Source: Mizuhopecten yessoensis (Eukaryota). Taken from it: DNA of 64,000 nucleotides. Both the position numbers and the translations under genes were made by a program. The first letter of the stretch is position 1; each line of letters opens with the position of its first letter. The stretch lies in contig NW_018404538.1 of assembly GCF_002113885.1 (NCBI RefSeq), forward strand, positions 185,306-249,305, read 5' to 3'. Below the pieces are notes generated by a model. The model searched no databases and had not been told where the DNA came from. It worked only from the letters and a program-made list of their open reading frames with translations. This document shows positions 37,860 to 61,831 of this stretch, one piece after another.

Positions 37860-39330
37860 TTATATTCTTATACACTGTACAATGCTCTCCTACTCTAAGG
37901 ACACTACTAACTTACTGTAATATGATATAATATGTAAAGGACACTGCTAAAAACTATAGTAAGATCCGTTATGTTAATTAAGTACACTGCTAAATACTGT
38001 AATATGATCTTTTATGTCAAGTACACTGCTTAATTCTGTAATATGCTCTGTTATGTTCTTTTATGTTAAGTACACTGCTGCATACTGTAATATGATCCGT
38101 TATGTTAAGTACACTGCAAAATACTGCAATATGATCCGTTATGTTAAGTACACTGCAAAATACTGCAATATGATCCGTTATGTTAAGTACACTGGTAAAT
38201 AATGTACTATGATCCGTCATATTAAGTACACTGGTAAATAATGTACCATGATCCGTCATATTAAGTACACTGGTAAATAATGTACCATGATCCGTCATAT
38301 TAAGTACACTGATACGTAATGTAATATGATCCGTCATGTTAAGGACACTGTTAAATACTGTTATATGATCCGTTATGTTAAGTACACTGGTAAGTAATGT
38401 AATATGATCCGTTATGTTAAGTACACTGCTAGATACTTAAGCATTATACTGCATTCTGTTCCGTGTTATTGTCCTAAACATGGAACATGATTGCAGACAA
38501 AATATATAACGCGCGTTATGATTATTTGTCTGTAATCCTGTTCCGTGTTATAGGACCAGGGCTCACTTGTATAAAACATCTCAACTCTTGAGATTTCCTC
38601 AAGTCTAAGATTTCCCATAGACAATACATTGCTTGAGATTTTCCTTAACTTTGAGATGTTTTATACAAGTGGGCCCATATCATGGAATAGAATGCTGTTT
38701 TTTGCATATAAATACATTTTTCATTATTTTTTTAAACTTTCATTTCTAAGTTCACAACGCACTTTTAAATTCGAATATCGCGCTGTTGTCACGTGACTTT
38801 TCCCGTACAAAAATAAAGTTCGTAAAAGTAAACAAAAAAATATTTCCACAATTTAATCAATAAATATATATTCAATTCACATTTTATGATAGACTTACAT
38901 AAAACGGTGAATGTTACTGAATCATACTGAGATTGTTTGCTTATCCGCTTGCTAGTGCGGATGGGAATAGCTATCTGGTAGTTAGTCGGTTCCGTGGAGA
39001 TATCCACGGAACTTGCCTTGGTAGTGTTATATAGTGGCAGTGCAGAGCAATAGTAAATATTGTAATATGATCTTTAATGTTAAATACACTGCTCAATACT
39101 GTAATATGATCCGTTATGTTAAGTACACTGATAAATACTGTTACATGATCCGATATGTTAAGAACCCTGCTAAATACTGTAAAACGATCCGTTCTGTTAA
39201 GGACACTGCTAAAAACTGTAGTATGATCTGTTATGTTCTTTTATGTTAAGTACACTGCTTAATATCGTACTATGATCAGCTATTTTAAGGACACTGCTTA
39301 TTATTGTAATATGAACTTTTATGTTAAGTT
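37860..39330. repeat. 39-bp minisatellite (TATGTTAAGTACACTGCAAAATACTGCAATATGATCCGT), interrupted at ~38437-39055
   Basis: 39-nt period on both sides of a ~620-bp insert. Confidence 0.9.
38559..38676. mobile_element. 118-bp MITE nested within a larger palindromic insert (~38437-39055)
   Basis: 26-bp TIRs GGGCTCACTTGTATAAAACATCTCAA / TTGAGATGTTTTATACAAGTGGGCCC with 1 mismatch. Confidence 0.8.
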
Positions 39331-39678: not shown

Positions 39679-40156
39679 TAATTAAAGGATTATGAAATGT
39701 TATTATCTTTACTGTTTTGATGCAGGTCGTATGAGGTTAAATTACCTATTGTGTTCTATTGATAAGCTGGACCGGTGAAAAGCTAATTTTTCATACTGCA
39801 AAACCTATTTGAAATCCAGACAGATATCACGAGCCGATGTAAGCTCTACAGAGACTTTATTTTACTGGATGAAAAAGAAAGACAAGCAAATCAGACAGGT
39901 ACTCAGAATCCATATGTCATGCACGTAATCTACAGTAGATGACAGACTTGTCATACTACACAACCTGATTGTACCTTGATTTCTTTTACCCGACGATGTC
40001 TATACATTTTTCAATAAATTAATTTACATAACCAGCATGTTTAACAAGCATTGATTATCTTAAAAATTGACAGTAGATCTTAATTAAAAACATAAATACC
40101 ATGTAAAATATTTTAGTTGCAAAAAGACAGAAATTTATTCCGTGTTTGCGGGGATA

Positions 40157-42555
40157 TATTACAACGCTTTTGTTGTGTTGTTGTGTTGTTGGTACCTGTA
40201 AAATTACAATGGAGACAGCCTGATAAATTTGATGTGTCTTTATTCTGGTCGCAGCTTCAAGTGGTTATATACAGACAATAATACATAGAAATTCTTGTTA
40301 TTGATATACATTATCAATCATGAATTAAACCACGCATTGGATTTAATTTACAATACAATGAACATCTAATGTAGAAACAAATAATAATAGAAACATACAT
40401 AGGAAATTTTTGTTATTGATATGAAATATCAATCGCGAATTAAACCACACTTTGGGTTTAATTACAGTACAATAAAAATCCTAATGTAGAAAAATAATAA
40501 ACAAAAATGGGGAAAATTAGCTAAGTTAAAACTGGGGAGAATTAACTAAGTAGAGCTACTCTTGCTTGGCAGTGAGGGGTCGATGTCTAATTAGGAATAA
40601 CTCGAGCAGCAGGGACCCAGCATAAACAATATAATAATATGTTAAAGTTTTTTTATGCAGAAAAACTTAATTAACCAATACACATTATAATTAACAATTA
40701 ATCGAGTATGGCAAAATAAAAATATACAAAACAAATTTAATCTTGATAAGGGAGGAAAGCTATTAACATGAATTTAATTTAGAGAATATTATGGTTCTAG
40801 TTAAGAATAAAATATTCAAAACAATTTAAATCTAGACAGTGTACAAAGAAGCAGGGAACCTACCACACGTGTATTTGTTTACATGGGAAAGCCCACTTCT
40901 TGTCTGCATTGGTAACTTCCGGTTTTGGAATGGACTTCCGGTTTATGGAAATTAACTGAATGAAAGTTCCAAGAGGGATGATTACAATTGCTGACTTACG
41001 AAATGATAAATAAAAACTCTGTTCTAAAAATTGTTCTTACAAACTTGTCTAATTTAAGTTAACGATGGGTATGGTGTTGATTAAAAAGTTGTTTGGACAT
41101 ATGAGGTAAATAATTCCAGAAACTCTTGAGTCATATAAAATGCAAACAATACTTTCCGCACAATTCTCAAACATGGTATTGAAATAATATATCAGGTAAC
41201 ATTTGGCGAGACAAGTATATAAAAATCATATGCATAACATCAACAAGTTACTTACTCTTTCTTGAGCATTGTGAGACGGGTAAATATACATTTCAAAATC
41301 ATGATGGTCCGTTAGGTAAAAGCACACACACGTGTTTATTTTCTTTTGCAAAGCGGAGGTTAAGAATTCAGAAGGGAACGTAACTCTATTCTAGTGCTCT
41401 GAACAATTTGGCCCACAAGTGCGGTAACAATACCAAAATCTTTGATAATTATAAGTTAAATACAAATAATAAGTTACAGCTTAAGGTAACGATTTCTTTT
41501 TAGCTTGCGTATATAAAATCTTTATAAAACTTCGTTCCTCAAAAATGTAAAGCCTTTGTTAAAGAAAAATATAATGTTTATGCTCCAAATTAGATTATTT
41601 TGGAGCATCTTAAATCTAATTTTTGCCTATCCAAACTTAATAGAATTCTACCGTACTTGAATTAAATCTGAAGGTCGAAAAGATTACAAGTGGGAAAACT
41701 ACAAATTCTGTGTCTCACACGTTACTTGGAATAAGATGTTATATTGCATTATAAACATAAAAAGGGTATAACACTAATAAACACAGAATAATTTCATACA
41801 AATGAATATGAATAAATTCAGTATACAAGAATTAAAATATAAAAATACATGTAAAAAGAATTGCTCACCTGTAAAATTACAATGGAGACAGCCTGATAAA
41901 TTTGATGTGTCTTTATTCTGGTCGTAGCTTCAAGTGGTTAGCTGTACAAGCGACAGGTAACTTACTCAGATGCCCCCAATGTTGGTGAGGTTCCAGGAGG
42001 GTTATTTACAGTATTTTCTATATGAAGTATAGGTAATTTACCTTTGAGGGGCCTCAACAAAAACATATATCCAGTCGGACCTTATTGCTGATTGGTCGGA
42101 TCTTAGCGTGGGTTCGGACAAAGAAATTTGTGAAAAACACCAATCTGGAAGTAAGGTTACGTAAGAGCACCCAAGTCCTAATTGACTCTAACACGGCCGA
42201 TAATTCTTTTACAAAGAGACAAAGATAGAGTCGGGACCGGACGTGAGTTCTTAATTGAAATGACAAAAGGGATTATGAGAATCTAACAGAGTCGCCGAAC
42301 CGAACAAATAATCTAAATGTGGGAAACGTAAATCTTGTTTGCCAAACTGTTTTAGAGCTCAATTAACGTGGCTAAGTATGTGGTTATTGTATTATTTGGG
42401 GATTATTGTTTGTAAAATGTTTTACGAAAATATTCCAAATAGTAAAAAGATTACGAAAATAATCCAAATAGTAAAAAGTTCCAAAATTTCATTGCAATAA
42501 ACAAGTTTATGTATTTTTATGTAAGTTATGAAAAATGTAAAATATCAGTATGATA
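40157..42555 (-). repeat. 3' LTR (~2.4 kb)
   Basis: Matches 51320-51797 and 52965-54433 with only a handful of visible differences. Termini TATCATA...TGTAATA on the minus strand. Confidence 0.88.
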
Positions 42556-42574
42556 TATCCCTCCTGGTTGGGAG
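42556..42574 (-). promoter_or_regulatory. Polypurine-tract region
   Basis: Minus strand ...GAGGACAAAGATTTCTCCCAACCAGGAGGGATA immediately precedes the 3' LTR. Confidence 0.6.
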
Positions 42575-42995
42575 AAATCTTTGTCCTCAAAGATTAAAAG
42601 TAGTGGTAGGAATTATTGAAAAAGGGAGATAATTCATACAAAAGTTCATACATATTGATCTACATATATAAAAGTCAATAAGTTGACAAGTGTCATGTTT
42701 TTAACTATATATACACATACATTTTAAACAACTCCGGCCGGTGGTTGAATAAAAGAATTATTTTAAAGTCATATTTGAATTATCACAAAGTTATTTGCCT
42801 TATAGACAAAGTGTCATGGAAAAATGACTTATGGTTGGTACAGTTGTACATATTATAATGTCCAACTTAAACAACAATTACACATTGAAGAAATGGAAAA
42901 GTAACATGTTTAAATACAATATATACATAAAATGTCAAAGTAAGTCATGCCTGGGTAATTCATGTCCATACAATAATCAAACTTGGCGTTTTTAT

Positions 42996-45215
42996 TCAAC
43001 TCAAAACTTGGAAGTACCCTTGATGGGTTAATATGAAGTAGGCAGCATATGGGTGCCTCAGTAGTTTTGCAATGCGCCGGGTTTGAAAGAGGGAGATATT
43101 AATGGTGTTGTTAGGGTAGATTACTTGTTTAGTGTGATTATTTATTATAGAAAACTGATCCCACTCAATATGAAGAGACCTTAAGACTCGACCTCTGAGT
43201 GTCGAGTTGTACACATGGTCAGTGATGGTAGGCAGGGTTGTTAAGTCAGGTAGTGCACTATAATGAAAACTGGGTACATCTGGTGGGATGGTTAGTGCAG
43301 AAGATTTTTGTGCTAATAATAAAGTAGCTGAAAGGCGACGAAATTTTCTTAATATCCAAATAAATAATGCAATTGCTAACCATGCCGAAGCTGTGGCAAG
43401 TAAAGCTATAATTCCGCTAGTGTCTGGCCAATTGCTGGAGGTAAATGCTAGCTGACCATCTATAATAGATTCTGATAATGTTTGAAATACTTTTTCGCCT
43501 TGTTTTGTTTTCTTAGCTATACGTTCAAGACTGAGATGGTACTGGTTGTCATTTGCCAAAGTTTGAGAAAAAGAGTGATTATAAATGTCGATATTTGGAA
43601 TTTTAATTTGAATTGATTTTCCATAATTAGTGTCTCCAAATATGGAGGCGTGATTTTCAGGGTTGAAAAAATGTTGAATCAATGCCAAATTGACAGGATG
43701 TAGTATGGTGATCTCTCCGGTGTCATTTTGACCTGGACCAAGTCTGGGTGGGAGATACAAATTATCTGAAGTGACCGAACATCTTGATGGTACACGTATT
43801 ACACAAAAATTACAACCTTTCATCATTTTCTGTCCAGACCGGCAGTCTAATGCTAACATTTTGGTGCGATACATCATTAAGGTTGAAGGTGAAAGTTCAA
43901 TAATGCTAGTTTTAAGTGTGTTTGGTACAAAACGGAAATCGCAAAAAGATTTCACTTGAGACTTTTGATTATAAAAAATTGAAGAATAACATGAACCAGA
44001 TGCTACAGAATTTAAAGCTACATGAAAAGGACAATACATAATGTCTTGTCCTGTACACTGACTCAGTTGGGTATGTGAAAGAACTGAAAAATGCTGATTA
44101 TCACTGGTATGTACAAAATAATCTGGAGTGTCTAATAATTGGGTGGCATGAGTTGATGTGGTGTTAATTGGCACTGGATAAGAGTAAACTTTGTATAGTG
44201 ATAAAGGTTGAACAAAAGATGATATAGGAATCTTCAACAAGATGTACAAATTAGAACTGTGTCTAGCATATAAAAAATTAGCAAATGAGTAATAATGTAT
44301 TGGATCAAAATGGATAATGTTTGTACCTGGATATCTTGTAGATAATATGTTCTGGACTTGTTTGAGTGTAGATATAATAGTCTGAGGTGACAAAATAAAG
44401 GGGGACAACTTGCCTTTAGCAAAATCATGAATTGCTAGCTGTACATGTTCTAAATGTTTTTCTAAAACTGCACTAGAGTTGATTTGTTTTAACATCCTAT
44501 TTTCTAGCAATATATACTCATGTTGCATTCCATCCATAGCACTAGAAAATTGTTGGGCTAAAGTAACAGATTCGTCATGATTGTCACGTACTGCCTTGAT
44601 AACATTGTCAAATCGTTCATTGACAGTAGATACAAATGATGTTAACTGATGGGCTTCCTGAGTCATGGCTTTGGCAAGTTTAATATTGTCATTGTTCATT
44701 GCTTGCATATGTTGTTTTAAGTTGTCAACATCACTTGATGTTGCTGTACCAAACAATGATTTAGAGACATCACCGATGAAGTCCATCAAACCTCGCTTGG
44801 ATCTTCTTGAACCAAATTTTAATGTATTTGGAAAGTAAGAATGAGGGATCAGGCGATGGATTTTTGTGACTGTGGAGTTTATACTAGCCATACATTGCAT
44901 TCTTAAAGCATTCAATGTTTTCAACACAACGTTTGCAGGTTCACATTGTTGACGTCTACACTGAAGACTTCCTGGGAGGTGTATTTTAGCTGGGAGTGTT
45001 ATTTCAAAGGTGTGGGACCAATATTCTTGGCCAAGATGTAATTTTGCAGTTGGATCAAACAAAATTCCATAGTTCAGTCTTTGAACTAGTGAAGGTTCAT
45101 TATCGCAGGCCGCAAAGGGGAGAATCAGAAGGGTCATCACAGCAAGGAAGCTCCACACAGGAGGAAGTCCAAAGATACCTAATAAGAAGCAGACAGATAG
45201 AATAAGATTTAGCAT
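42996..45215 (-). CDS. env: Envelope glycoprotein, class I fusion protein of baculovirus-F/errantivirus type
   Basis: Open ORF (first ATG 45215, 739 aa). Hydrophobic signal, furin site RRSKR, fusion peptide GLMDFIGDVSKSLFGTAT, heptad region, Cys-rich domain, TM GIIALLATASAWLAIALFIWIL, N-glycosylation sequons. Confidence 0.88.
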   Translation of the reverse strand: MLNLILSVCFLLGIFGLPPVWSFLAVMTLLILPFAACDNEPSLVQRLNYGILFDPTAKLHLGQEYWSHTFEITLPAKIHLPGSLQCRRQQCEPANVVLKTLNALRMQCMASINSTVTKIHRLIPHSYFPNTLKFGSRRSKRGLMDFIGDVSKSLFGTATSSDVDNLKQHMQAMNNDNIKLAKAMTQEAHQLTSFVSTVNERFDNVIKAVRDNHDESVTLAQQFSSAMDGMQHEYILLENRMLKQINSSAVLEKHLEHVQLAIHDFAKGKLSPFILSPQTIISTLKQVQNILSTRYPGTNIIHFDPIHYYSFANFLYARHSSNLYILLKIPISSFVQPLSLYKVYSYPVPINTTSTHATQLLDTPDYFVHTSDNQHFSVLSHTQLSQCTGQDIMYCPFHVALNSVASGSCYSSIFYNQKSQVKSFCDFRFVPNTLKTSIIELSPSTLMMYRTKMLALDCRSGQKMMKGCNFCVIRVPSRCSVTSDNLYLPPRLGPGQNDTGEITILHPVNLALIQHFFNPENHASIFGDTNYGKSIQIKIPNIDIYNHSFSQTLANDNQYHLSLERIAKKTKQGEKVFQTLSESIIDGQLAFTSSNWPDTSGIIALLATASAWLAIALFIWILRKFRRLSATLLLAQKSSALTIPPDVPSFHYSALPDLTTLPTITDHVYNSTLRGRVLRSLHIEWDQFSIINNHTKQVIYPNNTINISLFQTRRIAKLLRHPYAAYFILTHQGYFQVLS

Positions 45216-45388
45216 TTTGTATGCCGTTATGAGATGTTGCAATCACCTCAAAGCACTAAATAAACAGAATTACATCTTTTTAAATCTTAGCATTCAATGC
45301 ATTTAGAGAGAAAAAGTAGAAAGGAAGAAATAGAGAAAAAAAAATACCAGTAAAAGATACCAATGAGTTTACCTTCCCTGTGAATGTT

Positions 45389-48300
45389 TTATTGCCGTGA
45401 GAAAAATGTCAGTTTTGATTGCTTACCCTTTTTACGAGCTTTCCCTGTTTGCGTTTTTGTGATATGAAATTCGCGAACCATCGCTGGAGGTAGGTTTTCT
45501 ACAGGCTCCCAGGTTCGGACAGAATGACCAAGCCATTTCACACGAAATTCTTTGACTCCATTGCGAAACTTATACTTGATAAGTTTTTCAATTGGATAAG
45601 ACTGCTGGTCATCCTGAGAAGGGGAAGGGTTGTTTGGAGTTGATTTGATTGGTTGGGTAGGGATGGATTGGTCTGAATTATCAGCGTTTGGGGTGGGTTG
45701 CTTGGACTGTGCTGAACTATCAGCACATGGGGTGGGTTGGTTGGACTGTGCTGAATTATCAGCGATTGGGGATGGTTGGGTTTGGGTCTTTTGGTTGCGG
45801 TTGGTTGGTCCGGCTGGTCTCTTTTGAAATTGAACTTGCTGATTACCTGGGACATTAGCAATGTTGGGTGGACATGTTGGTGGATTTAAATTAGGCCTGT
45901 TGTCTGGGTTTGTATACAGTTTCAATCGATTTGCATGTATAAGAGATTTGATCTCCTTATGCGTATTGCATCGTCGAAGCTTGTAGGTATGGTTTGAACC
46001 TATATCGACAATGTAATATGGTCCGTCCCAAGGATGGTGTAGTTTTGGTGACAAGCCTTGGGGTATTTTAGGTGAGTGAAGCATAACCAAGTCATGGATG
46101 TGGAATTCGGGAACTGACGCCTTTTTGTCATAATGTTGTTTTTGTTTGGCTCTGGCCTCAGTTATGTTTTTATTTGCAGTCTGTCGTACATATTTGAGGT
46201 GGTCTATGAGCTGGTTGACATGTGTTTTAGCATCTTTGCTTAAACCATCTTTTGGGATTAAGGCAGTGTCGAAGGGTAAATTCATTTCTTTGCCAAACAT
46301 TATGTGATAAGGCGATAGGTTGGATGCTTGTGTAGATGGTGACATTCTGAAAGCCATAAGAACACCTGGTAAGAACTGTGGCCAGTTTAGTTGATTTTTA
46401 TCAACGTATGCTCTCAAGCATTGGGCCAGGGTACTGTTCATGCGTTCACATGTGGAGTTGGTTTGTGGATGGTAGGAACTTGTGAAGTGTCTAGTCACTT
46501 GAAAAATTTCACATACAGCGGTTACAAGTTTACTCATGAAATTCTGTCCTCTATCACTGATAATTGTACTTGGGGCACCATATCTGGCAAATATTTCAGA
46601 GTACAAAACCTTGGCAATTTCTTTAGAATCTTGTGTTTTAAGAGGAAATGCTTCTGGCCATTTGTTGAAAGAGTCGACCACCAGAAGAATGTATTTGTAA
46701 CCCTCTTTTGTTGTCGTGATAGGTCCTAAAATGTCCATATGTAGTCGTGAGAATGTGTCACAGATAGGCATTGTTGTTAATGGTGCATGCTTCTTTTTTG
46801 CAGTCTTTTTTATCCGTTGACATGTGTCACATGACCTGATATAGTCTTCAGTAATCCGAAACATTTTAGGCCAATAATACTTCAGTTGTATGGCTTTGTA
46901 TGTCCTATCAAACCCTAAGTGTGCGCCGCCAGCTTGACAGTCATGGTAAGATCTGAGAACATCTTCTCTAAGACACCTAGGGACTGCAAGTTGACGAAGA
47001 GGAGTTTTCTGAGTATCTCTCTTAGGGGCGGGTATGTACAAGTGATATAGGGTATCATCTAGTAGAACATACTGACTGGAAAGAGATAATATTCTGACAG
47101 CTTGTGGCTTTGATGTAGGTAGATCTCCTGTAGCCAAGTAATTGTAGATATCCCTAAAGTCTGGACATTTAGATTGAAGTCTACCCACTGGTTCCGGAGT
47201 AACAGAATCTGAAACTTCTGTTACAGGTGCGCTTGGGGTTTGATTACTGTATATAAATGTGACTTGTTGAAATGAAGACTTTTTTTCGGGACCTACATAA
47301 GAAACTTCTGGATGGGGGTCTACTTCTTCTAATTCATCTTTTGTAGTGGTAGTCTGAACTGGGGGGTATGGTCGTCTGGAAAGGGCATCAGCCACTTCAT
47401 TTGTTTTACCTGCCTTATACAAGATTTCAAAGTCATAGCCTTGTAAGAGTACAGACCACCTGGCTAACCTACCTGTGGACTCTGGCTTTATATCTTTCAT
47501 CCATTTAAGAGCACTATGGTCAGTATATACTTTAAAACATGTTGATGCTAGGTACACATGATATTTTTTTATACCTTCAACAATTGCAAGGCCTTCTCTT
47601 TCGGAAATGGAGTATTTCCGTTCATGTTGGTTAAGGGAACGACCACCATAGGCAATAACACGTTCACGTTTGTTTGTGTCTAACTGACCCAATACATACT
47701 CAATGGCTTCACCTGATGCATCTGTTGTCAAAATGAATGGTTTAGTGTGATCTGGGTATGCTAGTACTGGTGGGGAGGTCAAAGCTTGTTTGAGCTGGTC
47801 AAATGACCCTGTACAGGACTGTGACCATTCAAACTTCACATCCTTTTGGAGTAGTTTGTTTAATGGAGATGCTATCTTGCTATAGTTTCTGACAAACTTC
47901 CTATAGTAATTACAGAGACCTCAGAAAGATCTTACCTGTTTTTGGGTTTTTGGGACAGGATATGAATCAACAGCATCTGTTTTAGATGTATCAACTTGAA
48001 CTCCATCTTTAGAGATCACATGACCTAGGTAATGTACCTTATGTCGAGCAAATGAACACTTGCTTGGTTTGAGTGTTAAGTGTGCCTGCCTTGGCCTATC
48101 GAAGATCTCTTGTAAGTTATTCAAATGAGTCTCGAATGTACGTGAGAAAACTAGAATATCATCAATGTACACAAGACAGGTTTTCCAATTCAAAACATTC
48201 AAAACTTTGCACATATGAGATTGGAAACTTGCCGGGGCATTCACAAGTCCAAACGGCATTCTTTTCCACTGATAGACTCCAGCAGGGGTCACAAATGCTG

Positions 48301-49696
48301 ATTTGTGAGCAGTTTCAGGGTCCATTGGGATTTGCCAGAAACCAGAGGCGAGGTCAAGTGTTGAAAAGTATTGAGCTTTGGATTCTCCAATAGAATCAAA
48401 TACATCTTCGAGACGGGGAAGGGGGAAAGTACATTGTTTGGTGACAGCGTTGAGTTTCCTGTAATCTACAGCAAAACGTAACTGCCCATCTTTCTTTTTC
48501 ACCATTACAACGGGGCTCTGCCACATTGACGTGGATTCTGTTATGATGTCATTTTCTAGCATTTCTTTTATCTGTCTTTCAGTTTCAGCCTTGACCTCAG
48601 GGTTTTGATGATAAAATCGTTGCCTGATGGGAAGTGCATCACTGGTTTCAATTTTATGTTTTTGCTGAGATGTATGACCTAATTCTGAAAGATCAGTGGC
48701 AAAAACATTTCTGTTTTGTTGAAGAAATCCTTGTAGGAGTAGTTTTTGATTTTCTGAAAGATCTGATTTGTCTAGGTCAAAAGAGATGTGATCATGATCA
48801 GATGTTATTGTACCTGAGGACAGTGATGATGAAGGTTTTGTATCAAGGGACGTGTCGAGAGACATGACAGTGTATTTATCAATGATTGATACCAAACCTA
48901 TCACTTTGCCAGGAAAGAGTACAACTTGTTTTTCTGATGGATTCATGACTTGAATAACACATGTTTGGTCTGGTTGGATGATGGAAACACATTTGGCTCC
49001 TACAAGTCCTAATGAAGGTAATTTAGGTAGTGGTTCAAAAAGTATTTGAGATTTTGGTGGTAGGTCTAATACTTTGACTTGTATATTGTTAACTGACAAT
49101 GGGGGTAGAATGTTTCGTGTAGTGTTCCTAGCCAAAGATACTTCTGTGTGGATAGACAGGATTTTGTTTGTATCAAGTTCTTTCAAAAACAAAGTTTTCT
49201 TTTTAATGTCAATGACTGCCTCATGTGTATTTAAAAAGTCTAGGCCTAAAATTAATGGAATATGAAAGTTTTCAAAAACATGAAAGTCAGCAGTGAAAAC
49301 ACAATCTCCAATCGTGACAGGAATGGTTATTTTACCCAGACTGCGATGTGACTCGCCTCCTGCAACCACTGCGGTTACAGCTGAACACTGTTTAATTTGT
49401 GTACATGTGTCTACCTTTAGTTTAGTCAACAAAGATAATGTAACACAGGAGATTGTAGCTCCAGTATCAACCAGCGCTTTTACTGGTGATTCATAAATCT
49501 CTACACTAACAGTGTTTCTATCTACGGGAGTTACAAGATTAACTATCTCTACTGGTTTGTCGGGTGAGTTGGGTTGGAGAGAATGGATGGGTGGCTGGGG
49601 TTTGGAGAATGTAGCGTTAATCTTGGGTCCTGTGATGGGTGGTACTGCACTAGTCTGGTGTTGCCTATCCATGCTGCCAGGGATAGGCGCGTATCC
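45389..49696 (-). CDS. pol: Pol polyprotein (protease, RT, RNase H, integrase, chromodomain), interrupted by one in-frame TGA at 47921-47923
   Basis: VDTGA, YIDD, TTDAS/EREGLA/YTDH, HHCC, LHMDILGP/SDRGQNF/CERMN and GPY motifs. VRSF*GLCNYYRKF has a stop replacing the conserved Leu; the two ORF pieces are in the same frame. Confidence 0.93.
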
Positions 49697-51291
49697 CTAG
49701 TGTCTATGAGGGTATTGTGCAGGGGCAGTAGAAGATTGGTGTTGGTTGGTGTTATTGGAGGGAGGTTGGTTAAATTTCTTTCTGCGGCATGCATCAGAAT
49801 TATGATGCCAAAGTTTACAAAATGAACATTGTGTATTATAAGCAGGACATAAAAAACGCCCTTGGCATGACTTACCACATCCCTGGCATGGCCTTCTGTT
49901 CTGGAATTGCTGTTGCTGTGGTTGGTGTTGGAATAGTTGCTGATGCTGGAATGGTTGCTGAGGCTGATACTGTTGGTGAGGCTGGAATGATGGCTGAGGC
50001 TGAAATGGTTGCTGAGGTTGGTACTGTTGCTGGGACTGGTATGTTGGCTGAGGCTGGAATGATTGCTGGTACTGCTGCTGAGGCTCAAAAGATTGCCGTT
50101 GACGATGTTGAGCAGAAGTTTGTTGCTTTGAGTTGTTGTTGTGGAGTTGTTTCGCCGCAATGACTGACACCTCTTCTTTAACACCCTCTATCTGGCTTAC
50201 AATTTGGGTTTGCAATTTTGAAACCAGTTCGTCGCAAAACTTGGTCATTGAAATCATACTGACACTGTCTGGATCTGTGGTGCATGAGATCTCTTCCTTC
50301 GCTAAGTCGACAGCATGATGAAGGTCCAGAAAGGATTTTGGTTCCTTTCCCAGCACTTTGGAACGGAATTTGGGTTGAATCCATTTAATGCTACCTGGAC
50401 TTTGTAGCTCTCTGCTATGGTGTGTCCTAAAGCCAATTTTTCAGCCCTTTCTAGAAACTTTTCCACACTCTCGTCACTTTCTTGTTTCAATGAAAAAAAC
50501 TTATTGTCTGTCGATTTTTGTCCAAATGGGTTTAAGAATGATTCTTTGAATTTGGTCAGGTCTAATTTTTCATGCTCTGGTATTCCTTGCAGCCAAAGCG
50601 CTGCAGCACCATCCATGTTGAATGACATTGCTGCCAGTGTCCTGTCATTTGTTACATTGTGGAACTTTTGCCAGGCTTGTAGGTTGGCCAGCCATAGCAC
50701 AGGTGAATCTGTTACATTATATTTTTTTAAGTTTATTCCACCGGTCGCCATTTCTGAATGGATATCTTGTAGATTGTCCTGTGGTGGTGGTGGTGGAGGT
50801 AATTCTATATTGTCTTCTATTGTTTGATTATGTATTTGTTGTGTCAGGAGTAACACCTCGTGCTCAAGCTGTCTTATCTGGTCTAAATGTGTTTGCTGTT
50901 GTTCTGGTAGCTGTTCCTGTTGCTGGGGTGGTGGTGGTGGTGTCTGTTCAGGCTGATGTGGTGGTTCCGGTTGTTGTGGTAGTCCTGGTTGTTGTTGTTG
51001 TTCTGGTTGCTGTTGTTGTTCCGGTTGCTGTTGTTGTTCCGGTTGCTGTTCTGGTTGCTGTGGTGGTTCCGGTTGTTGTTCCTGTTGCTGTTCTGGTTGT
51101 TGTTCCGGTTGCTGTTGTTGTTCGGGTTGTTGTTGTTGTTCCAGTTGTTGTTCTGGCTGCTGTTGTTGTTCTGGCTGCTGTTGTTGTTCTGGTTGTTGTT
51201 GTTGTTGTTGTTGTTTAGGTAGGTCCCTAGTTGCTGCACGAGTCTTGGCGGTGTAGTTTATTGGCACTGTCACTTTGTTTTTTCCTGTCAT
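49697..51291 (-). CDS. gag: Gag with Q/P/E-rich N-terminus, capsid-like core and Cys/His knuckles; -1 frame break at ~50370
   Basis: ORF 51291-50302 joins ORF 50356-49697 as ...NGFNP/KFRSKVLGKEPKSF. Contains CQGCGKSC...CPA...CSFCKLWHHNSDAC. Confidence 0.85.
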
Positions 51292-51300
51292 CGAGGATCT

Positions 51301-51316
51301 TGGGGACTCTCCACCA
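51301..51316 (-). promoter_or_regulatory. Primer-binding site, probably tRNA-Ala
   Basis: TGGTGGAGA(GTCCCCA) 3 nt inside the 5' LTR, complementary to the ...UCUCCACCA 3' end of eukaryotic tRNA-Ala. Confidence 0.7.
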
Positions 51317-52352
51317 ATTTATTACAACGCTTTTGTTGTGTTGTTGTGTTGTTGGTACCTGTAAAATTACAATGGAGACAGCCTGATAAATTTGATGTGT
51401 CTTTATTCTGGTCGCAGCTTCAAGTGGTTACATACAGACAATAATACATAGAAATTCTTGTTATTGATATACATTATCAATCATGAATTAAACCACGCAT
51501 TGGATTTAATTTACAATACAATGAACATCTAATGTAGAAACAAATAATAATAGAAACATACATAGGAAATTTTTGTTATTGATATGAAATATAAATCGCG
51601 AATTAAACCACACTTTGGGTTTAATTACAGTACAATAAAAATCCTAATGTAGAAAAATAATAAACAAAAATGGGGAAAATTAGCTAAGTTAAAACTGGGG
51701 AGAATTAACTAAGTAGAGCTACTCTTGCTTGGCAGTGAGGGGTCGATGTCTAATTAGGAATAACTCGAGCAGCAGGGACCCAGCATAAACAATATANNNN
51801 NNNNNNNNNNNNNNNNNNNNNNNNNNNNNNNNNNNNNNNNNNNNNNNNNNNNNNNNNNNNNNNNNNNNNNNNNNNNNNNNNNNNNNNNNNNNNNNNNNNN
51901 NNNNNNNNNNNNNNNNNNNNNNNNNNNNNNNNNNNNNNNNNNNNNNNNNNNNNNNNNNNNNNNNNNNNNNNNNNNNNNNNNNNNNNNNNNNNNNNNNNNN
52001 NNNNNNNNNNNNNNNNNNNNNNNNNNNNNNNNNNNNNNNNNNNNNNNNNNNNNNNNNNNNNNNNNNNNNNNNNNNNNNNNNNNNNNNNNNNNNNNNNNNN
52101 NNNNNNAAAGTTCCATCCTGTTACCAATACCATTAAAGATTTTAACAAGAAAAATAAAAAATAAATAGATTAACTTATTCTTGTGATAAAATATCAATTC
52201 TAATTAATTTCACATATTATTGTTTCAAAAGCACTGGTCGAACGGCACTGTACAGATTCTGGAAATAGGGATCACCGAAACGAGAGCTAAATAAATCACG
52301 TTGTTGTACACCTCCAGTCGAGGTAAATTGGATTATTTTAATCATTACCCAT

Positions 52353-52963
52353 TAGGAGTGAAACGATTCACCGCGATTATGGTGAACCGCGATTACTTGC
52401 TCCCGATTCGATTCTCGATTTTACAACTCTGATATTTCGATTCGATTCTTACAAATTCTGTCCGTGTTTGACTTTACATTTAGACGCACCCCTAGTCCTG
52501 TTAAAACGCAGATTTTGATTGGCCAACACACTTTGCGTAGGCCAATCAAATTGCGCGTTGCTGTTACTGCAAACTACTGCAAACATGGAGTACGAGTTAG
52601 CCGACCCGCCCGCATCATATAAATCTCCCGTGTGGAAACACTTTGGGTTTCCAATCGTCGACGGAAAAACGGAAAAAAATGTCACTATTTGCAAGATATG
52701 TTATTTAAAGATGTCATACAAAGCTGGCTCGACGACAGCAATGAACGCACATCTAAAACGTAAACACAATGTGGACTGTGATAAAGCTGCTTCGGTCAGT
52801 TCGGAGTCTTCCGCTAACAACGATCGTCGGTCTGAACAAAAACCAGAACATGTTGATATGCTCATTTTCCTAGCAAAAAACTTTGTAGTTTAAATGCATA
52901 TGTGTTTACTCTTTATTGCTTTAAGTGAAGTTATCACATTATAGTAATTCCAGTTGAACTTTC
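52353..52963 (+). mobile_element. Internally deleted hAT transposon (ZBED1/Ac-like); right end lost in the gap
   Basis: Starts TAGGAGTGAAACGATT with CGATT subterminal repeats and encodes a BED finger ORF. Confidence 0.7.
52585..52893 (+). CDS. 102-aa BED zinc-finger mini-protein fused to the hAT transposase C-terminal tail
   Basis: KSPVWKHFGF...CKIC...GSTTAMNAHLKRKH is a BED finger. KPEHVDMLIFLAKN is the end of the hATC dimerisation domain. Confidence 0.7.
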   Translation: MEYELADPPASYKSPVWKHFGFPIVDGKTEKNVTICKICYLKMSYKAGSTTAMNAHLKRKHNVDCDKAASVSSESSANNDRRSEQKPEHVDMLIFLAKNFVV

Positions 52964-55399
52964 NAAAAGTTGTTTGGACATATGAGGTAAATAATTCCAG
53001 AAACTCTTGAGTCATATAAAATGCAAACAATACTTTCCGCACAATTCTCAAACATGGTATTGAAATAATATATCAGGTAACATTTGGCGAGACAAGTATA
53101 TAAAAATCATATGCATAACATCAACAAGTTACTTACTCTTTCTTGAGCATTGTGAGACGGGTAAATATACATTTCAAAATCATGATGGTCCGTTAGGTAA
53201 AAGCACACACACGTGTTTATTTTCTTTTGCAAAGCGGAGGTTAAGAATTCAGAAGGGAACGTAACTCTATTCTAGTGCTCTGAACAATTTGGCCCACAAG
53301 TGCGGTAACAATACCAAAATCTTTGATAATTATAAGTTAAATACAAATAATAAGTTACAGCTTAAGGTAACGATTTCTTTTTAGCTTGCGTATATAAAAT
53401 CTTTATAAAACTTCGTTCCTCAAAAATGTAAAGCCTTTGTTAAAGAAAAATATAATGTTTATGCTCCAAATGAGATTATTTTGGAGCATCTTAAATCTAA
53501 TTTTTGCCTATCCAAACTTAATAGAATTCTACCGTACTTGAATTAAATCTGAAGGTCGAAAAGATAACAAGTGGGAAAACTACAAATTCTGTGTCTCACA
53601 CGTTACTTGGAATAAGATGTTATATTGCATTATAAACATAAAAAGGGTATAACACTAATAAACACAGAATAATTTCATACAAATGAATATGAATAAATTC
53701 AGTATACAAGAATTAAAATATAAAAATACATGTAAAAAGAATTGCTCACCTGTAAAATTACAATGGAGACAGCCTGATAAATTTGATGTGTCTTTATTCT
53801 GGTCGTAGCTTCAAGTGGTTAGCTGTACAAGCGACAGGTAACTTACTCAGATGCCCCCAATGTTGGTGAGGTTCCAGGAGGGTTATTTACAGTATTTTCT
53901 ATATGAAGTATAGGTAATTTACCTTTGAGGGGCCTCAACAAAAACATATATCCAGTCGGACCTTATTGCTGATTGGTCGGATCTTAGCGTGGGTTCGGAC
54001 AAAGAAATTTGTGAAAAACACCAATCTGGAAGTAAGGTTACGTAAGAGCACCCAAGTCCTAATTGACTCTAACACGGCCGATAATTCTTTTACAAAGAGA
54101 CAAAGATAGAGTCGGGACCGGACGTGAGTTCTTAATTGAAATGACAAAAGGGATTATGAGAATCTAACAGAGTCGCCGAACCGAACAAATAATCTAAATG
54201 TGGGAAACGTAAATCTTGTTTGCCAAACTGTTTTAGAGCTCAATTAACGTGGCTAAGTATGTGGTTATTTAATTTGGGGATTATTGTTTGTAAAATGTTT
54301 TACGAAAATATTCCAAATAGTAAAAAGATTACGAAAATAATCCAAATAGTAAAAAGTTCCAAAATTTCATTGCAATAAACAAGTTTATGTATTTTTATGT
54401 AAGTTATGAAAAATGTAAAATATCAGTATGATATATCCCTCCTGGTTGGGAGCATTCGGCAAGTGTTACTATCGATGAGGGACTCGCCGACGACCTGGGA
54501 CGATTTCACCAGCTTCTCCACTTGCAACGGACGCTAGTGTAGATTCTAGAAGACAGTGAATTATTCTGTTCTGTTGAAAAGGACCTGTTATAGATCAGGT
54601 GTTCATTAAAAATGTTTGTGGCTGGAGTTAAGACACGATGTAATTTAGACGCGGACTTAAATTTCTTTAAACAGGGTGATTACATGTTGATAATATCAGA
54701 AAAAGGATTATTAAAATGTATTTACATGCATTTTAACCGTTGATAGACAATCTCGATTTGTTTTGGTTTGGTTGTGTGCGTGTGTGTGTGTGTGTGTTGA
54801 TGGGGTAAAAAAAGGGGGGGGGGGGTTCAGAGGTCATGTAACGGTACATGTAGTACTGTTGATATTACTACACACTTGCTTTTATTGAATCATGCAAACA
54901 TTTTGAGTTGGTACTATTATCTAGAGGCACTGCAACACGAATGTAAATAGTGTGGTATAGCTGCATAATATGTGGGTCGACTTTAGTAAATGTATTGTCA
55001 ACACTACTATGACGTGTGTTAACAGTGACGTCACAGTCGTGTAACAACATGTTGTGAGCGTCAATTCATCCTTTCACAAACAGCAAAATACGTATGACTG
55101 GGTACATATATACGGACTTATCAGTATCAACTGATGTCATTTTGAAGGTAAGGACAAATAACCAAGCGCAAGTACTACATTGAAACAATTTTCAGTTCGA
55201 TAAAATGAAAATATCAAAATTATATGTGGGACATCGAAGGATTTCATCAGTAACATCGACTTTTAACAAAAATGTAGAATTGTTTCGGACATTCCCGTAC
55301 TTTCAGTACATGTGTTGCTATAACGGCTCGTACCGGTGTGAGATTTCCTTGTCTCACCCTAGGGTTGAGACGGGGATTCCCCTATTTTTTTCGCAAATG

Positions 55400-56422: not shown

Positions 56423-59319
56423 CACCTAGCGGGTTTTATGGGATTTGCCAGAGGCCACTTGTAATCATATCAACAATAATTACATCCAGACAACCAGTTA
56501 TTGTTTCAGTGAGTAAGATAGGGGAATCTCAACCCTCGGGGAAGGATTCGACAAAGCCTCGTGTGTGACAACTAAAGAAACTCCCCCCTCGGGTTGAGAT
56601 TCCCCTATCTCCTCCCCAAGGGGTTCAGACATTCTATAATTATTTCAACACTTTCATGAATCTATTAACTTGTCATAAATTCAATGCGTCAAGTGGTTTC
56701 TCTCCTTTTTTGGGTTCATTGACTATATAAACTGCCCTCCTAAAATAGAGGACGTCTTCCAGACCTCTTCCTACTACTACATGGGGACTGTTTCTCTGAT
56801 AAAATAGAGGACGTCTTCAAGACCACTTCCTTTACCTACATGAGGACTGTTTCTCCGATGAAATAGAGGACGTCTTCCAGACCTCTTCCTACTACTACAT
56901 TCCCCGGGGACTCTTTCCCTGATAAAATAGAGGACGTCTTCCGAACTTCTTCCTTCTACTACATGGGGACTGTTGCCCTGATAAAATAGAGGACGTCTTC
57001 CGAACTTCTTCCTACTACTACATAGGTCTGTTTTCCTGATAAAATGAGGATTTCTTTGAGACTTCTTCCTTCCTCTTTATGGGGACTGTTTCCCTAATTA
57101 AATAGAGGACATCTTCCAGACCTCTTTCTACAACTACATGGATACTGTTTCCCTGATCAGATAGAGGACGTCTTCAATACCTCCTCCTTTACCTACGTAC
57201 CTCTTCCTTTACCTATATGAGGACTGTTTTTCTGATAAAATAGAGGACGTCTTCCAGACCTCTTCCTACTACCACATGGGGACTGTTTCCCTGATAAAAT
57301 AGAGGACGTCTTCAAGACCACTTCCTTTACCTACATGAGGACTGTTTCTCTGATAAAATAGAGGACGTCTTCCAGACCTCTTCCTACTACTACATGATGA
57401 CTGTTTCCCTGATAAAATAGAGGACGTCTTCAAGACCACTTCCTTTACCTACATGAGGACTGTTTCTCCGAATAAATAGAAGACATCTTCCAGACCTCTT
57501 CCTACTACTACATGAGGACTGTGTCTCTGACAAAATAGAAGACGTCTTCCAGACCTCTTCCTTCTACTACATGAGGACTGTTTCTCTGGCAAAATAGAAG
57601 ACGTCTTCCAGACCTCTTCATTCTACTACATGAGGACTGTTCCCCTGACAAAATAGAGGACGTCTTCCAGACCTCTTCCTACTACTACATGAGGACTGTT
57701 TCCCTGACAAAATAGAGGACATCTTCCAGACCTCTTCCTTCTACTACATGAGGACTGTTTCTCTGACAAAATAGAAGACGTCTTCCAGACCTCTTCATTC
57801 GACTACATGAGGACGGTTCCCCTGACAAAATAGAGGACGTCTTCCAGACCTCTTCCTCCTACCACATGGGGACTGTTTCCCTGATAAAATAGAGGACTTC
57901 TTCAAGACAACTTCCTTTACCTACATGAGGCCCGTTTCTCTGATAAAATAGAAGACTGCTTCCAGACCTCTTCCTACTATCACATGGGGACTGTTTCCCT
58001 GATAAAATAGAGGACATCTTCAAGACCACTTCCTTTACCTAAATGAGGACTGTTTCTCCGAATAAATAGAAGACGTCTTCCAGACCTCTTTCTACTACCA
58101 CATGGGGATTGTTTCCCTGATAAAAAAGAGGACGTCTATGAAATAGAGGACGTCTTCCATACCTCTTCCTACTACCACATGCGGACTGTTTCTCTGATAA
58201 AACAGAGGACGACTTCCAGACCTCTTCCTACATGGGGACTGTTTCTCTGATAAAACAGAGGACGACTTCCAGACCTCTTCCTACACCTACATGAGGACTG
58301 TTCCTCCGAATAAATAGAAGACGTCTTCCAGCCTACTACTACATTCCCCGGGGACTCTTTCCCTGATAAAATAGAGGACTTCTTCAAGACAACTTCCTTT
58401 ACCTACATGAGGATTGTTTCTCTGATAAAACAGAGGACGTCTTCCAGACCTGTTCCTACTACCACATGGGGACTGTTTCCCTGATAAAATAGAGGACATC
58501 TTCAAGACCACTTCCTTTACATACATGAGGACTGTTTCTCCGAATAAATAGAACTTCCAGACCTCTTCCTACTACTACATGATGACTGTTTCCCTTATAA
58601 AATAGAGGACGTCTTCAAGATCACTTCCTTTACCTACAGGAGAAGACGTCTTCCAGACCTCTTTCTACTACCACATGGGGACTGGTTCCCTGATAAAATA
58701 GAGGACATCTTCAAGACCACTTCCTTTACATACATGAGGACTGTTTCTCCGAATAAATAGAACTTCCAGACCTCTTCCTACTATCACATGGGGACTGTTT
58801 CCCTGATAAAAAAGAGGACGTCTATGAAATAGAGGACGTCTTCCATACCTCTTCCTACTACCACATGCGGACTGTTTCTCTGATAAAATAGAAGACGTCT
58901 TCCAGCCTACTACTACATTCCCCGGGGACTCTTTCCCTGATAAAATAGAGGACGGCTTCACGATCACCTGCTTTACCTACATGAGGACTGTTTCTCCGAA
59001 TAAATAGAAGACGTCTTCCAGACCTCTTCCTTTTACTACATGAGGACTGTTCACCTGACAAAATAGAGGACGTCTCCAAGACTCTTCCTACTCCTGCATG
59101 TATACATAATTTTCATTGGTGTTATTGGTGGTCAGCGCATCAGAGGCACGGCAACAAAATTGAATTCTAAAATTTTGAATTTTGTCAGTTTACATACAGA
59201 AATGTATGTCTTAAAAAAGATAAATATGTAAATATTAAAAATACCTGGTTGTCTGGATGTAATTATTGTTGATATAATTACAAGTGGCCTCTGGCAAATC
59301 CCATAAAACCCGCTAAGTG
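56423..59319. mobile_element. TIR element (75-bp TIRs) carrying an internal 59-bp tandem array
   Basis: 56423-56497 is the reverse complement of 59245-59319. Internal array at ~56735-59098. Confidence 0.8.
56735..59098. repeat. 59-bp minisatellite (AAAATAGAGGACGTCTTCCAGACCTCTTCCTACTACTACATGGGGACTGTTTCTCTGAT), ~40 units
   Basis: 59-nt period (56742, 56801). Confidence 0.95.
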
Positions 59320-59342
59320 GCCTCTGGCAAATCCCATAAAAC

Positions 59343-61815: not shown

Positions 61816-61831
61816 ATGTCCGGATTTCAAA
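61816..61831 (+). CDS. Possible first coding mini-exon (MSGFQ) of an unidentified gene
   Basis: ACA-ATG TCC GGA TTT CAA A|GTAAGT in a locally CpG-rich region. No downstream exon was identified. Confidence 0.25.

What the first reader, a model, noticed from the sequence alone, without database searches (positions are those of the whole stretch)
40157..54452. Young invertebrate endogenous retrovirus-like element combining an F-type env with a chromodomain integrase
Seen: complete gag-pol-env between near-identical 2.4 kb LTRs. Env has a furin site, fusion peptide and TM. The integrase ends in a chromodomain. Established: env-bearing Ty3/gypsy elements are best known as insect errantiviruses, which lack chromodomains, while classical chromoviruses lack env. 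Inference: this may be a little-characterised, recently active and potentially infectious Metaviridae lineage in a non-insect host.
Basis: partly seen in the sequence, partly recalled or inferred. Interest (0 to 1): 0.85.

Follow-up and report, generated by a model that had tools for sequence, protein, structure and literature searches.

The report
Scallop env-carrying chromodomain gypsy retroelement
This is a young but damaged copy of a retrovirus-like Ty3/gypsy element in a scallop genome, with an F-type envelope gene and a chromodomain on its integrase; that combination was already described for molluscs, annelids and cnidarians, so it is a new member of a known kind.

Summary
The observation largely holds. 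On the minus strand, 40154-54454, lies an LTR element ordered gag, PR-RT-RNaseH-IN-chromodomain, env. Env is an intact F-type class I fusion protein: Pfam Baculo_F, a furin-like site, a fusion peptide, a TM segment, and a predicted fold matching RSV, PIV3 and NDV F. The integrase tail is a true chromodomain by sequence (HP1/CBX5, E 2e-6) and by fold (TM 0.75-0.84).

Three corrections:
- The element is not complete. gag carries one frameshift and pol one premature in-frame stop. env is unbroken.
- The N gap lies in the 5' LTR, not in a gene. Only 1,971 bp of the LTRs can be paired (99.4-99.7%). Beyond the gap sits an unrelated 857-bp piece encoding a BED zinc finger, so continuity across the gap is not shown.
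- No target-site duplication was found.

The host is almost certainly the Yesso scallop, because two NCBI gene models map to this locus at 99.6-100%.

The combination is not new. Chary and Hayashi (bioRxiv 2023, eLife 2026) describe env-carrying Ty3/gypsy elements across metazoans, including a chromodomain-bearing clade in Cnidaria, Mollusca and Annelida. Oyster and pearl-oyster relatives show the same chromodomain-env junction.

One modest extra: the env model's best viral fold match is an abalone herpesvirus protein.

The parts
40154..54454 (-). Whole LTR element: 5' LTR, gag, pol, env, 3' LTR, read on the minus strand
   Evidence: Direct repeats, domain order, termini.
51317..54454 (-). 5' LTR as assembled: 3,138 positions including 311 N and a foreign 857-bp piece
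   Evidence: 51317-51796 pairs with 40154-40633 at 99.4%. 52965-54452 pairs with 41084-42574 at 99.67%. It starts with TG.
51797..52106 (.). Assembly gap of 310 N inside the 5' LTR, outside all genes of the element
   Evidence: LTR homology ends at its left edge. Not filled.
52107..52963 (+). 857-bp piece unrelated to the LTR, bounded by the gap and by a single N at 52964. It holds a BED zinc-finger ORF (52519-52893, + strand). It is either a nested foreign fragment or a misplaced contig.
   Evidence: No match to the other LTR or to the rest of the window. zf-BED 40.6 bits, above the cut-off.
51295..51316 (-). Primer-binding-site-like stretch that starts with TGG and abuts the inner edge of the 5' LTR. 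The tRNA was not identified.
   Evidence: No tRNA gene in the window.
49697..51291 (-). gag, broken by one frameshift. It has a Q/P/E-rich repeat N-terminus, a Retrotrans_gag capsid domain and one CCHC zinc knuckle.
   Evidence: Pfam Retrotrans_gag 27 bits. CCHC knuckle. All six relatives that cover gag need two frames here, including a 543-aa scallop gag at 77% identity.
45389..49672 (-). pol, broken by one in-frame stop with no frameshift. It contains PR, RT, RNase H, IN and a chromodomain.
   Evidence: Pfam. Four full-length relatives of 1,361-1,413 aa each align in a single frame over 45392-49666. The motifs DTGA, YIDD, HHCC, D-D-E and GPY are present.
49208..49510 (-). Aspartic protease domain (DTGA)
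   Evidence: Pfam Asp_protease and RVP_2; motif.
48014..48502 (-). Reverse transcriptase domain (YIDD)
   Evidence: RVT_1 124.8 bits. Ty3 RT 4ol8/7q5b, E 1e-53.
47435..47752 (-). RNase H domain
   Evidence: RT_RNaseH 114.7 bits.
46466..46984 (-). Integrase zinc-binding (HHCC) and catalytic core (D-D-E)
   Evidence: Integrase_H2C2 68.5 bits and rve 46.6 bits. Ty3 intasome chain 7q5b, E 2.7e-58.
45464..45628 (-). Chromodomain at the C-terminus of pol, after a disordered linker
   Evidence: Pfam Chromo 22.6 bits, below the 25.1 cut-off, E 1e-4. PDB sequence hits to CBX5, HP1, Clr4 and Polycomb from E 2.2e-6. AF2 pLDDT 94-97. Foldseek matches to HP1, CBX and Rhino chromodomains with TM 0.75-0.84 and rmsd 1.1-1.6 A.
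42996..45242 (-). env, an open frame with no breaks (first ATG at 45215): an F-type class I fusion glycoprotein
   Evidence: Baculo_F 60.2 bits. Features. AF2 mean pLDDT 74. Foldseek matches to RSV, hPIV3 and NDV F at E about 1e-10 and to baculovirus F at 1e-16.
44739..44804 (-). Furin-like cleavage site (R-S-K-R) followed by the fusion peptide
   Evidence: The site is present in 38 of 51 aligned relatives, and four invariant columns fall in the fusion peptide.
43347..43415 (-). env transmembrane segment, followed by a cytoplasmic tail of about 115 aa
   Evidence: Hydropathy. Helix 600-635 in the model. A hydrophobic segment is present in 50 of 50 relatives.
42578..42588 (-). Polypurine-tract-like run just upstream of the 3' LTR
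40154..42576 (-). 3' LTR, 2,423 bp, uninterrupted

Best explanation
This is a recently inserted but defective provirus-like copy of an env-carrying Ty3/gypsy (Metaviridae) retroelement in the genome of the Yesso scallop, Mizuhopecten yessoensis. It belongs to the chromodomain-bearing, F-type-env group of non-insect 'ancient errantiviruses' described by Chary and Hayashi.

How the family most likely works:
- The 5' LTR drives a genomic RNA (inferred).
- gag is translated first. pol lies in the same frame behind the single gag stop, so Gag-Pol would arise by readthrough. The frame arrangement is shown; readthrough is inferred.
- PR, RT/RNase H and IN carry intact catalytic motifs (shown).
- Reverse transcription is primed at a tRNA-type site next to the 5' LTR and at a polypurine tract next to the 3' LTR. 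The sites are shown; the tRNA is unknown.
- The integrase's C-terminal chromodomain tethers integration to methylated-histone chromatin. This is inferred from the fold and from what is established, to my knowledge, for chromovirus integrases. Two of the three aromatic-cage positions are kept and the third is His. The setting in a window that is about 65% tandem arrays fits this, but it is one insertion only.
- env is made as a precursor with a signal peptide and is cut at a furin-like site. That frees an N-terminal fusion peptide on a membrane-anchored subunit, as in a class I fusogen of the paramyxovirus/baculovirus F type. Sequence features and fold are shown; cleavage and fusion are inferred.

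This particular copy cannot do all of this by itself. gag has one frameshift, pol has one premature stop, and the 5' LTR is interrupted or misassembled.
For: Architecture and Pfam domains.

Ty3 is the best solved relative of both RT and IN. Catalytic motifs are present.

env:
- Baculo_F at 60 bits.
- Signal-like N-terminus, furin-like site, fusion peptide and TM.
- These features are conserved in 38/51 (furin-like site) and 50/50 (TM) relatives, and eight cysteines are kept in at least 49 of 51 rows, with two more in 46 of 51.
- AF2 model and Foldseek matches to RSV, PIV3 and NDV F, probability 1.0, E about 1e-10, and to baculovirus F.

Chromodomain. The two tryptophan columns are invariant in 50 relatives.

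Host: env is 100% identical to OWF53805.1, and XP_021346496.1 maps at 100%. Both are M. yessoensis models and both map wholly onto this locus.

Family:
- pol relatives of 1,361-1,413 aa in Pinctada, Mytilus, Haliotis and Solemya; 51 of the 120 listed carry Pfam Chromo.
- env relatives in Pecten, Argopecten, Pinctada, Saccostrea, Mytilus, Haliotis and Mya.
- Oyster and Pinctada gene models join a chromodomain directly to the env N-terminus.

Literature: a chromodomain-bearing env clade in Cnidaria, Mollusca and Annelida. F-type env with a furin site and fusion peptide.

Youth: 5 mismatches and 2 indels in 1,971 paired LTR bases.

Lesions.
Against: - No target-site duplication flanks the element.
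- The LTR ends are TG...AT rather than the usual TG...CA.
- The 5' LTR lacks a counterpart for 450 bp of the 3' LTR and holds a foreign piece between two N marks. The locus may therefore be partly an assembly composite or a recombinant of two copies.
- The frameshift and the stop could be assembly errors.
- Placement in the published clade rests on shared features and host, not on a tree. No reference sequences were on hand.
- The Pfam Chromo score for this copy is below the curated cut-off (22.6 against 25.1).
- The third aromatic-cage position is His, so methyl-lysine binding is not assured.
- One insertion in satellite-rich DNA says little about targeting.
Confidence: 0.85

Rival explanations
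1. Assembly composite. The locus as written is stitched from reads of several copies of the family, or is a recombinant of two insertions. On this reading the lesions, the odd 5' LTR and the missing target-site duplication do not describe one real provirus.
For: There are two N marks inside the 5' LTR with an unrelated BED-finger piece between them. No TSD was found. The scaffold is a gapped draft.
Against: gag, pol and env are colinear and full length against relatives, with no rearrangement. The paired LTR parts are colinear and 99.4-99.7% identical. No other fragment of the family lies in the window. This rival changes the details of this copy, not what the element is.
Confidence: 0.2
2. 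Domesticated env. The envelope gene is kept by the host as a cellular gene, for example as a fusogen or a restriction factor, while gag and pol decay.
For: env is unbroken while gag and pol are each broken once. NCBI annotates the locus as a host gene, LOC110445931.
Against: The LTRs are only about 0.25% diverged, which is too young for differential decay to mean anything. Two lesions in about 5.9 kb against none in 2.2 kb is within chance. The gene models are automatic and join pol or gag frames to env. No ortholog at a conserved locus was shown.
Confidence: 0.04
3. One reading: a little-characterised, complete and potentially infectious new Metaviridae lineage.
For: The family has an intact, conserved F-type env and a young copy. 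The closest pol outside this locus is only 60% identical and the closest env outside the species only 64%. The family itself may therefore be unnamed.
Against: The kind is already published, including chromodomain-bearing mollusc elements. This copy is not complete and its 5' LTR is disrupted.
Confidence: 0.1

Closest known systems
'Ancient errantiviruses' with chromodomain: the clade from Cnidaria, Mollusca and Annelida (Chary and Hayashi, eLife 2026, PMC13524379; preprint 2023)
   Same: gag-pol-env order. Ty3/gypsy pol. F-type env with a furin-like site, fusion peptide and TM. Chromodomain C-terminal to the integrase. Mollusc host. Highly similar LTRs.
   Different: Membership by phylogeny was not tested here. 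The paper catalogued intact copies, and this copy has one break in gag and one in pol. I could not check whether the scallop family is in their table.
Insect errantiviruses (gypsy, ZAM, Idefix, 17.6; genus Errantivirus)
   Same: Ty3/gypsy pol followed by an env of the baculovirus-F type (Pfam Baculo_F). An LTR element with a tRNA-type primer site.
   Different: The host is a bivalve, not an insect. The integrase carries a chromodomain. By the paper's account non-insect elements form a separate pol group with a different RNase H bridge region; that feature was not tested here.
Chromoviruses (Ty3, Tf1, MAGGY, Sushi, CRM and others)
   Same: Ty3/gypsy pol whose integrase ends in a chromodomain with an HP1-like fold. 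Yeast Ty3 is the best solved relative of both RT and IN.
   Different: It carries an env gene. The published tree puts the env-bearing chromodomain clade basal to known chromoviruses, not inside them. The third aromatic-cage residue is His.
Paramyxovirus/pneumovirus F and baculovirus F (Ld130) class I fusion proteins
   Same: Predicted fold. Precursor layout of signal peptide, furin-type site, fusion peptide, long helices and a C-terminal TM.
   Different: About 10-15% sequence identity. Global TM-scores are low (0.2-0.35) for a monomer model. It is encoded by a retroelement.
Malacoherpesvirus ORF54/ORF68 membrane glycoprotein family (oyster and abalone herpesviruses; Savin et al. 2010, PMC2994540)
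   Same: The best viral fold match of the env model is an abalone herpesvirus protein of similar length, E 1.3e-24. NCBI named this locus' env model after ostreid herpesvirus ORF68.
   Different: The link was not tested at sequence level, because fetching proteins of an animal virus was barred. That the matched abalone protein belongs to the ORF54/68 family is inferred from the NCBI name, not shown. The direction and age of any exchange are unknown.

Membership tests
Ty3/gypsy (Metaviridae) | pol domain order PR-RT-RNase H-IN, with RT and IN closest to Ty3/gypsy | tested here: met
   Pfam order. Ty3 Gag-Pol is the top PDB hit for RT (1e-53) and IN (2.7e-58).
Ty3/gypsy (Metaviridae) | Flanking LTRs, a tRNA-type PBS, a PPT, and a target-site duplication | tested here: inconclusive
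   LTRs, a PBS-like site and a PPT-like run are present. No TSD was found and the termini are TG...AT. The 5' LTR is interrupted.
Env-carrying 'ancient errantiviruses' with chromodomain (Chary and Hayashi) | Third ORF after pol encoding an F-type (or gB-type) glycoprotein with signal peptide, furin site, fusion peptide and TM | tested here: met
Env-carrying 'ancient errantiviruses' with chromodomain (Chary and Hayashi) | Chromodomain C-terminal to the integrase | tested here: met
   Pfam alone is sub-threshold for this copy.
Env-carrying 'ancient errantiviruses' with chromodomain (Chary and Hayashi) | [quoted passage not shown] | not testable with these tools
   No reference sequences of the published elements or of GyDB were on hand, and the supplements are not held.
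Env-carrying 'ancient errantiviruses' with chromodomain (Chary and Hayashi) | RNase H followed by a 'mini' domain rather than a pseudo-RNase H in the bridge to IN | not tested
   Both structure-prediction jobs went to env and to the IN tail. About 150 residues lie between the RNase H and IN zinc-domain hits.
Env-carrying 'ancient errantiviruses' with chromodomain (Chary and Hayashi) | All three ORFs intact (the paper's criterion for listing) | tested here: not met
   One frameshift in gag and one in-frame stop in pol. env is intact.
Insect errantiviruses (genus Errantivirus) | Insect host and placement in the insect pol group | tested here: not met
   The host is a scallop. All close relatives are molluscan. 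No tree was made.
Chromoviruses | Chromodomain on the integrase | tested here: met
Chromoviruses | gag-pol only, with no env | tested here: not met
   An env ORF of 748 codons follows pol.
Chromoviruses | Full aromatic cage (three aromatic residues) for methyl-lysine binding | tested here: inconclusive
   Tyr and Trp are kept and the third position is His. Relatives have Tyr there in 18 of 50 rows.

The most novel reading that the evidence does not exclude
The F-type env of this bivalve retroelement lineage may be specifically related to the ORF54/ORF68 membrane glycoprotein family of mollusc herpesviruses, more closely than to baculovirus or paramyxovirus F. That would point to gene exchange between a herpesvirus lineage and LTR retroelements within molluscs. 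Separately, the chromodomain may steer these env-carrying elements into satellite heterochromatin.
Probability: 0.3. Interest if true: 0.55.

Novelty: new member of a known kind. Interest (0 to 1): 0.3.

Why it matters
The locus documents a young scallop copy of a retrovirus-like lineage that joins a class I fusion envelope to chromatin-reading integration. It supports the published view that env-carrying Ty3/gypsy elements are widespread and recently mobile outside insects.

It also has practical value for annotation. Two public scallop 'host' gene models (OWF53805.1, named 'transmembrane protein ORF68', and XP_021346496.1) are in fact pieces of this element. Pol relatives filed under bacterial symbiont MAGs are probably bivalve DNA.

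The fold link to a mollusc herpesvirus glycoprotein is a small new lead on where invertebrate F-type envelopes circulate.

Tried and rejected
- **Profile of 51 env relatives against PDB sequences.** It gave only marginal coronavirus spike HR1 hits (best E 0.003), so sequence alone does not reach solved F proteins. The fold search did.
- **tRNA scan and Rfam scan of the window.** Neither found anything, so the primer tRNA stayed unidentified.
- **Bacterial promoter/terminator scan of the 5' LTR.** It is no better than shuffles and is the wrong model for a eukaryote.
- **Search for a TSD under several boundary choices.** None was found.
- **Search for other fragments or solo LTRs of the family in the window.** None.
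- **Flank-to-flank comparison.** No similarity.
- **Supplement look-up for the published element table.** Not held.
- **Literature search for Baculo_F or PF12259 with mollusc herpesviruses.** Neither term occurs in any paper the search listed.
- **Frame-0 ORF of 211 codons inside the gag region.** Rejected as spurious: it has no Pfam hit and low-complexity content, and the overlapping frame carries the CCHC knuckle.
- **Exhaustive representative-protein search.** Not run.

Left out because I could not tell whether they are barred: look-ups that fetch the DNA of sister copies or relatives of this animal virus-like element (look-up of encoding contigs, the search for related loci), and any fetch of herpesvirus or baculovirus proteins.

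Slips I noticed (nothing was deleted):
- One search printed the three commonest residues with counts for 58 chromodomain columns.

Full report
**1. What is there**

The element reads on the minus strand.
- Direct repeats mark a left LTR at 40154-42576, which is the 3' LTR, and a right LTR at 51317-54454, which is the 5' LTR.
- Between them, Pfam finds the following in order: Retrotrans_gag, aspartic protease, RVT_1, RNase H, the integrase zinc domain, the rve core, Chromo, and, in a separate frame, Baculo_F.
- A stretch starting with TGG abuts the inner edge of the 5' LTR, as a tRNA primer site would. A purine run precedes the 3' LTR.
- The finding's coordinates are right to within 2-3 bases.

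**2. The gap, tested first**

- The 310 N at 51797-52106 lie inside the 5' LTR, about 500 bases outside gag. No gene of the element crosses them, and the ORFs that the mechanical list shows across them are artefacts.
- Left of the gap, 480 bases pair with the 3' LTR at 99.4%.
- Right of the gap, 857 bases (52107-52963) match neither the other LTR nor anything else in the window. On the plus strand they encode a BED zinc finger at 40.6 bits, above the cut-off.
- A single N follows at 52964. From 52965 the LTR pairs again over 1,491 bases at 99.67%.
- The 450 bases at 40634-41083 of the 3' LTR have no counterpart in the 5' LTR as assembled.
- Continuity across the gap is therefore not shown. The piece is either part of a nested foreign insertion or a misplaced contig.

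**3. State of the genes**

- env is open from its first ATG (45215) to its stop, with no break.
- pol: four full-length relatives of 1,361-1,413 residues each align to the window in a single frame and over their whole length. pol is therefore colinear and complete but for one in-frame stop that those relatives lack.
- gag: the capsid part and the part with the CCHC knuckle lie in two frames. All six relatives that cover gag need both frames, including a 543-residue gag of the scallop Ylistrum balloti at 77% identity. That is one frameshift.
- The single stop between the knuckle part of gag and pol is most likely the native end of gag, because the relatives' pol products begin just there. gag and pol share that frame, which suggests readthrough. 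That is an inference.
- Count: gag one frameshift, pol one stop, env none.
- Either lesion could be an error of a draft assembly.
- The catalytic motifs DTGA, YIDD, HHCC, D-D-E and GPY are all present.

**4. The envelope**

- The product has a hydrophobic N-terminus and a furin-like R-S-K-R site followed by a glycine- and phenylalanine-bearing hydrophobic stretch.
- It has nine N-glycosylation sequons and thirteen cysteines.
- One transmembrane segment lies near residue 620, followed by a tail of about 115 residues.
- In an alignment with 50 relatives, all four invariant columns of the N-terminal half fall in the fusion peptide.
- The furin-like site is present in 38 of 51 rows and the membrane segment in 50 of 50. 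Eight cysteines are kept in at least 49 of 51 rows and two more in 46 of 51.
- The AlphaFold model has mean pLDDT 74, with 491 of 739 residues at 70 or above.
- Its best matches among solved structures are the F proteins of RSV, parainfluenza virus 3 and Newcastle disease virus, at probability 1.0 and E about 1e-10 over roughly 500 columns.
- Global TM-scores are low (0.2-0.35), as expected for a monomer model of a protein that changes shape.
- Among predicted viral structures it matches baculovirus F at about 1e-16 and many invertebrate RNA-virus glycoproteins. Its single best match is an uncharacterised protein of an abalone herpesvirus, E 1.3e-24.

**5. The chromodomain**

- Pfam scores this copy just under its cut-off: 22.6 against 25.1 bits, E 1e-4.
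- The last 137 residues of pol hit solved chromodomains by sequence: CBX5 at 2.2e-6, then HP1, Clr4 and Polycomb.
- A model of the last 227 residues has pLDDT 94-97 over three strands and a helix.
- That part superposes on HP1, CBX, Rhino and Polycomb chromodomains with target-normalised TM 0.75-0.84 and rmsd 1.1-1.6 A.
- Of the three aromatic-cage positions, Tyr and Trp are kept and the third is His. Both tryptophan columns are invariant in 50 relatives.
- A disordered linker of about 100 residues, with a 39-base tandem repeat, separates the domain from the integrase's SH3-like/GPY part.

**6. Host and relatives**

- env is 100% identical to OWF53805.1, 'transmembrane protein ORF68' of Mizuhopecten yessoensis. 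That model maps wholly onto this locus at 99.6-100%, and XP_021346496.1 of the same species at 100%.
- The window is therefore almost certainly Yesso scallop. Both 'host genes' are automatic models that splice pieces of gag or pol to env.
- The next env relatives are from Pecten maximus (64%), Argopecten irradians (62%), Pinctada, Saccostrea, Mytilus, Haliotis and Mya.
- The best pol relative is from Pinctada imbricata at 60%. Of the 120 listed pol relatives, 51 carry Pfam Chromo.
- An oyster model (P0187) has a chromodomain above the Pfam cut-off, followed within seven residues by a stretch 47% identical to the N-terminus of this env.
- A Pinctada model (P0032) runs integrase, chromodomain, Baculo_F.
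- The pairing is thus a lineage trait of pteriomorph bivalves, not a chimera of this locus.

**7. Comparison with what is known**

- Chary and Hayashi (PMC13524379; preprint 2023) searched invertebrate genomes for intact gag-pol-env Ty3/gypsy elements and listed 1,512 of them.
- They report F-type and gB-type envelopes across phyla. [quoted passage not shown]
- Their F-type envelopes show the same furin site, fusion peptide and RSV-F-like fold.
- I file the element as a new member of that known kind. I could not run the tree that would prove membership, nor check whether the scallop family is already in their table.

**8. Age and setting**

- There are 5 mismatches and 2 indels in 1,971 paired LTR bases, about 0.25%. 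That points to a recent insertion, of the order of 0.1 to 1.3 million years for assumed rates of 1e-8 to 1e-9 per site per year. The rate is my assumption.
- No target-site duplication was found and the LTR ends read TG...AT. This keeps open a recombinant or composite origin.
- About 65% of the window outside the element is tandem arrays with units of 25 to 424 bases. This fits chromodomain-guided insertion into heterochromatin-like DNA, but it is a single case.

**10. Verdict**

It is a real feature, correctly spotted and well delimited, but it is neither complete nor of a new kind. Interest is modest at 0.3. The herpesvirus-like fold match of env is the one lead that goes beyond the published picture.

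Noticed in passing
window 42996-45242 (env); The best viral fold match of the env model is an uncharacterised abalone herpesvirus protein (E 1.3e-24), ahead of baculovirus F (about 1e-16). NCBI named this locus' env model after ostreid herpesvirus ORF68. ORF54/ORF68 are described as a membrane glycoprotein family of mollusc herpesviruses (PMC2994540). The errantivirus paper did not include them among its outside F homologues.
   Followed up: partly
window 52107-52963: An 857-bp piece between the 310-N gap and a single N is unrelated to the LTR around it. It encodes a BED zinc finger on the plus strand (52519-52893). It is either a nested fragment of another mobile element or a misplaced contig.
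   Followed up: partly
window 1-39325 and 56741-63021: About 65% of the window outside the element is tandem arrays. The units are 30 bp (2302-7052, 13061-16289), 34 bp (18324-19489), 32 bp (20148-32858, 12.7 kb), 58 bp (33551-37134), 39 bp (37896-39325), 59 bp (56741-60055), 25 bp (60794-61265) and 424 bp (61966-63021). Several arrays have strong strand skew in G/C.
   Followed up: partly
window 42999-50257 (public gene models P0121 and P0188): Two public scallop protein models, OWF53805.1 'transmembrane protein ORF68' and XP_021346496.1 'LOC110445931', are made entirely of this element's env joined to pieces of gag or pol in another frame. They are retroelement ORFs annotated as host genes.
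   Followed up: partly
proteins P0015, P0089, P0093: Pol relatives at 47-50% identity are filed in NCBI as proteins of bacterial MAGs (Candidatus Thiodiazotropha, Sedimenticola). To my knowledge these bacteria are symbionts of marine invertebrates, bivalves among them. The entries are probably host retroelement DNA binned with the bacteria.
   Followed up: no
window 50945-51206 and 49929-50068 (gag); 45673-45779 (pol linker): gag carries two coding tandem arrays of 18-base units that give long Gln/Pro/Glu-rich runs. The linker between the integrase and the chromodomain holds a 39-base repeat. All three are low-complexity, probably disordered segments that may vary in length between copies.
   Followed up: no
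window 42996-43346 (env tail): The cytoplasmic tail of env, about 115 residues after the TM segment, is predicted to be folded rather than disordered. It shows several strands and a helix, with pLDDT about 70-84. Its role is unknown.
   Followed up: no
window 40281-40500 and 51444-51663: Both LTRs hold a 115-bp unit repeated 1.9 times, and a 74-bp stretch recurs at two places within each LTR. At 2.4 kb the LTR is long for a Ty3/gypsy element.
   Followed up: no
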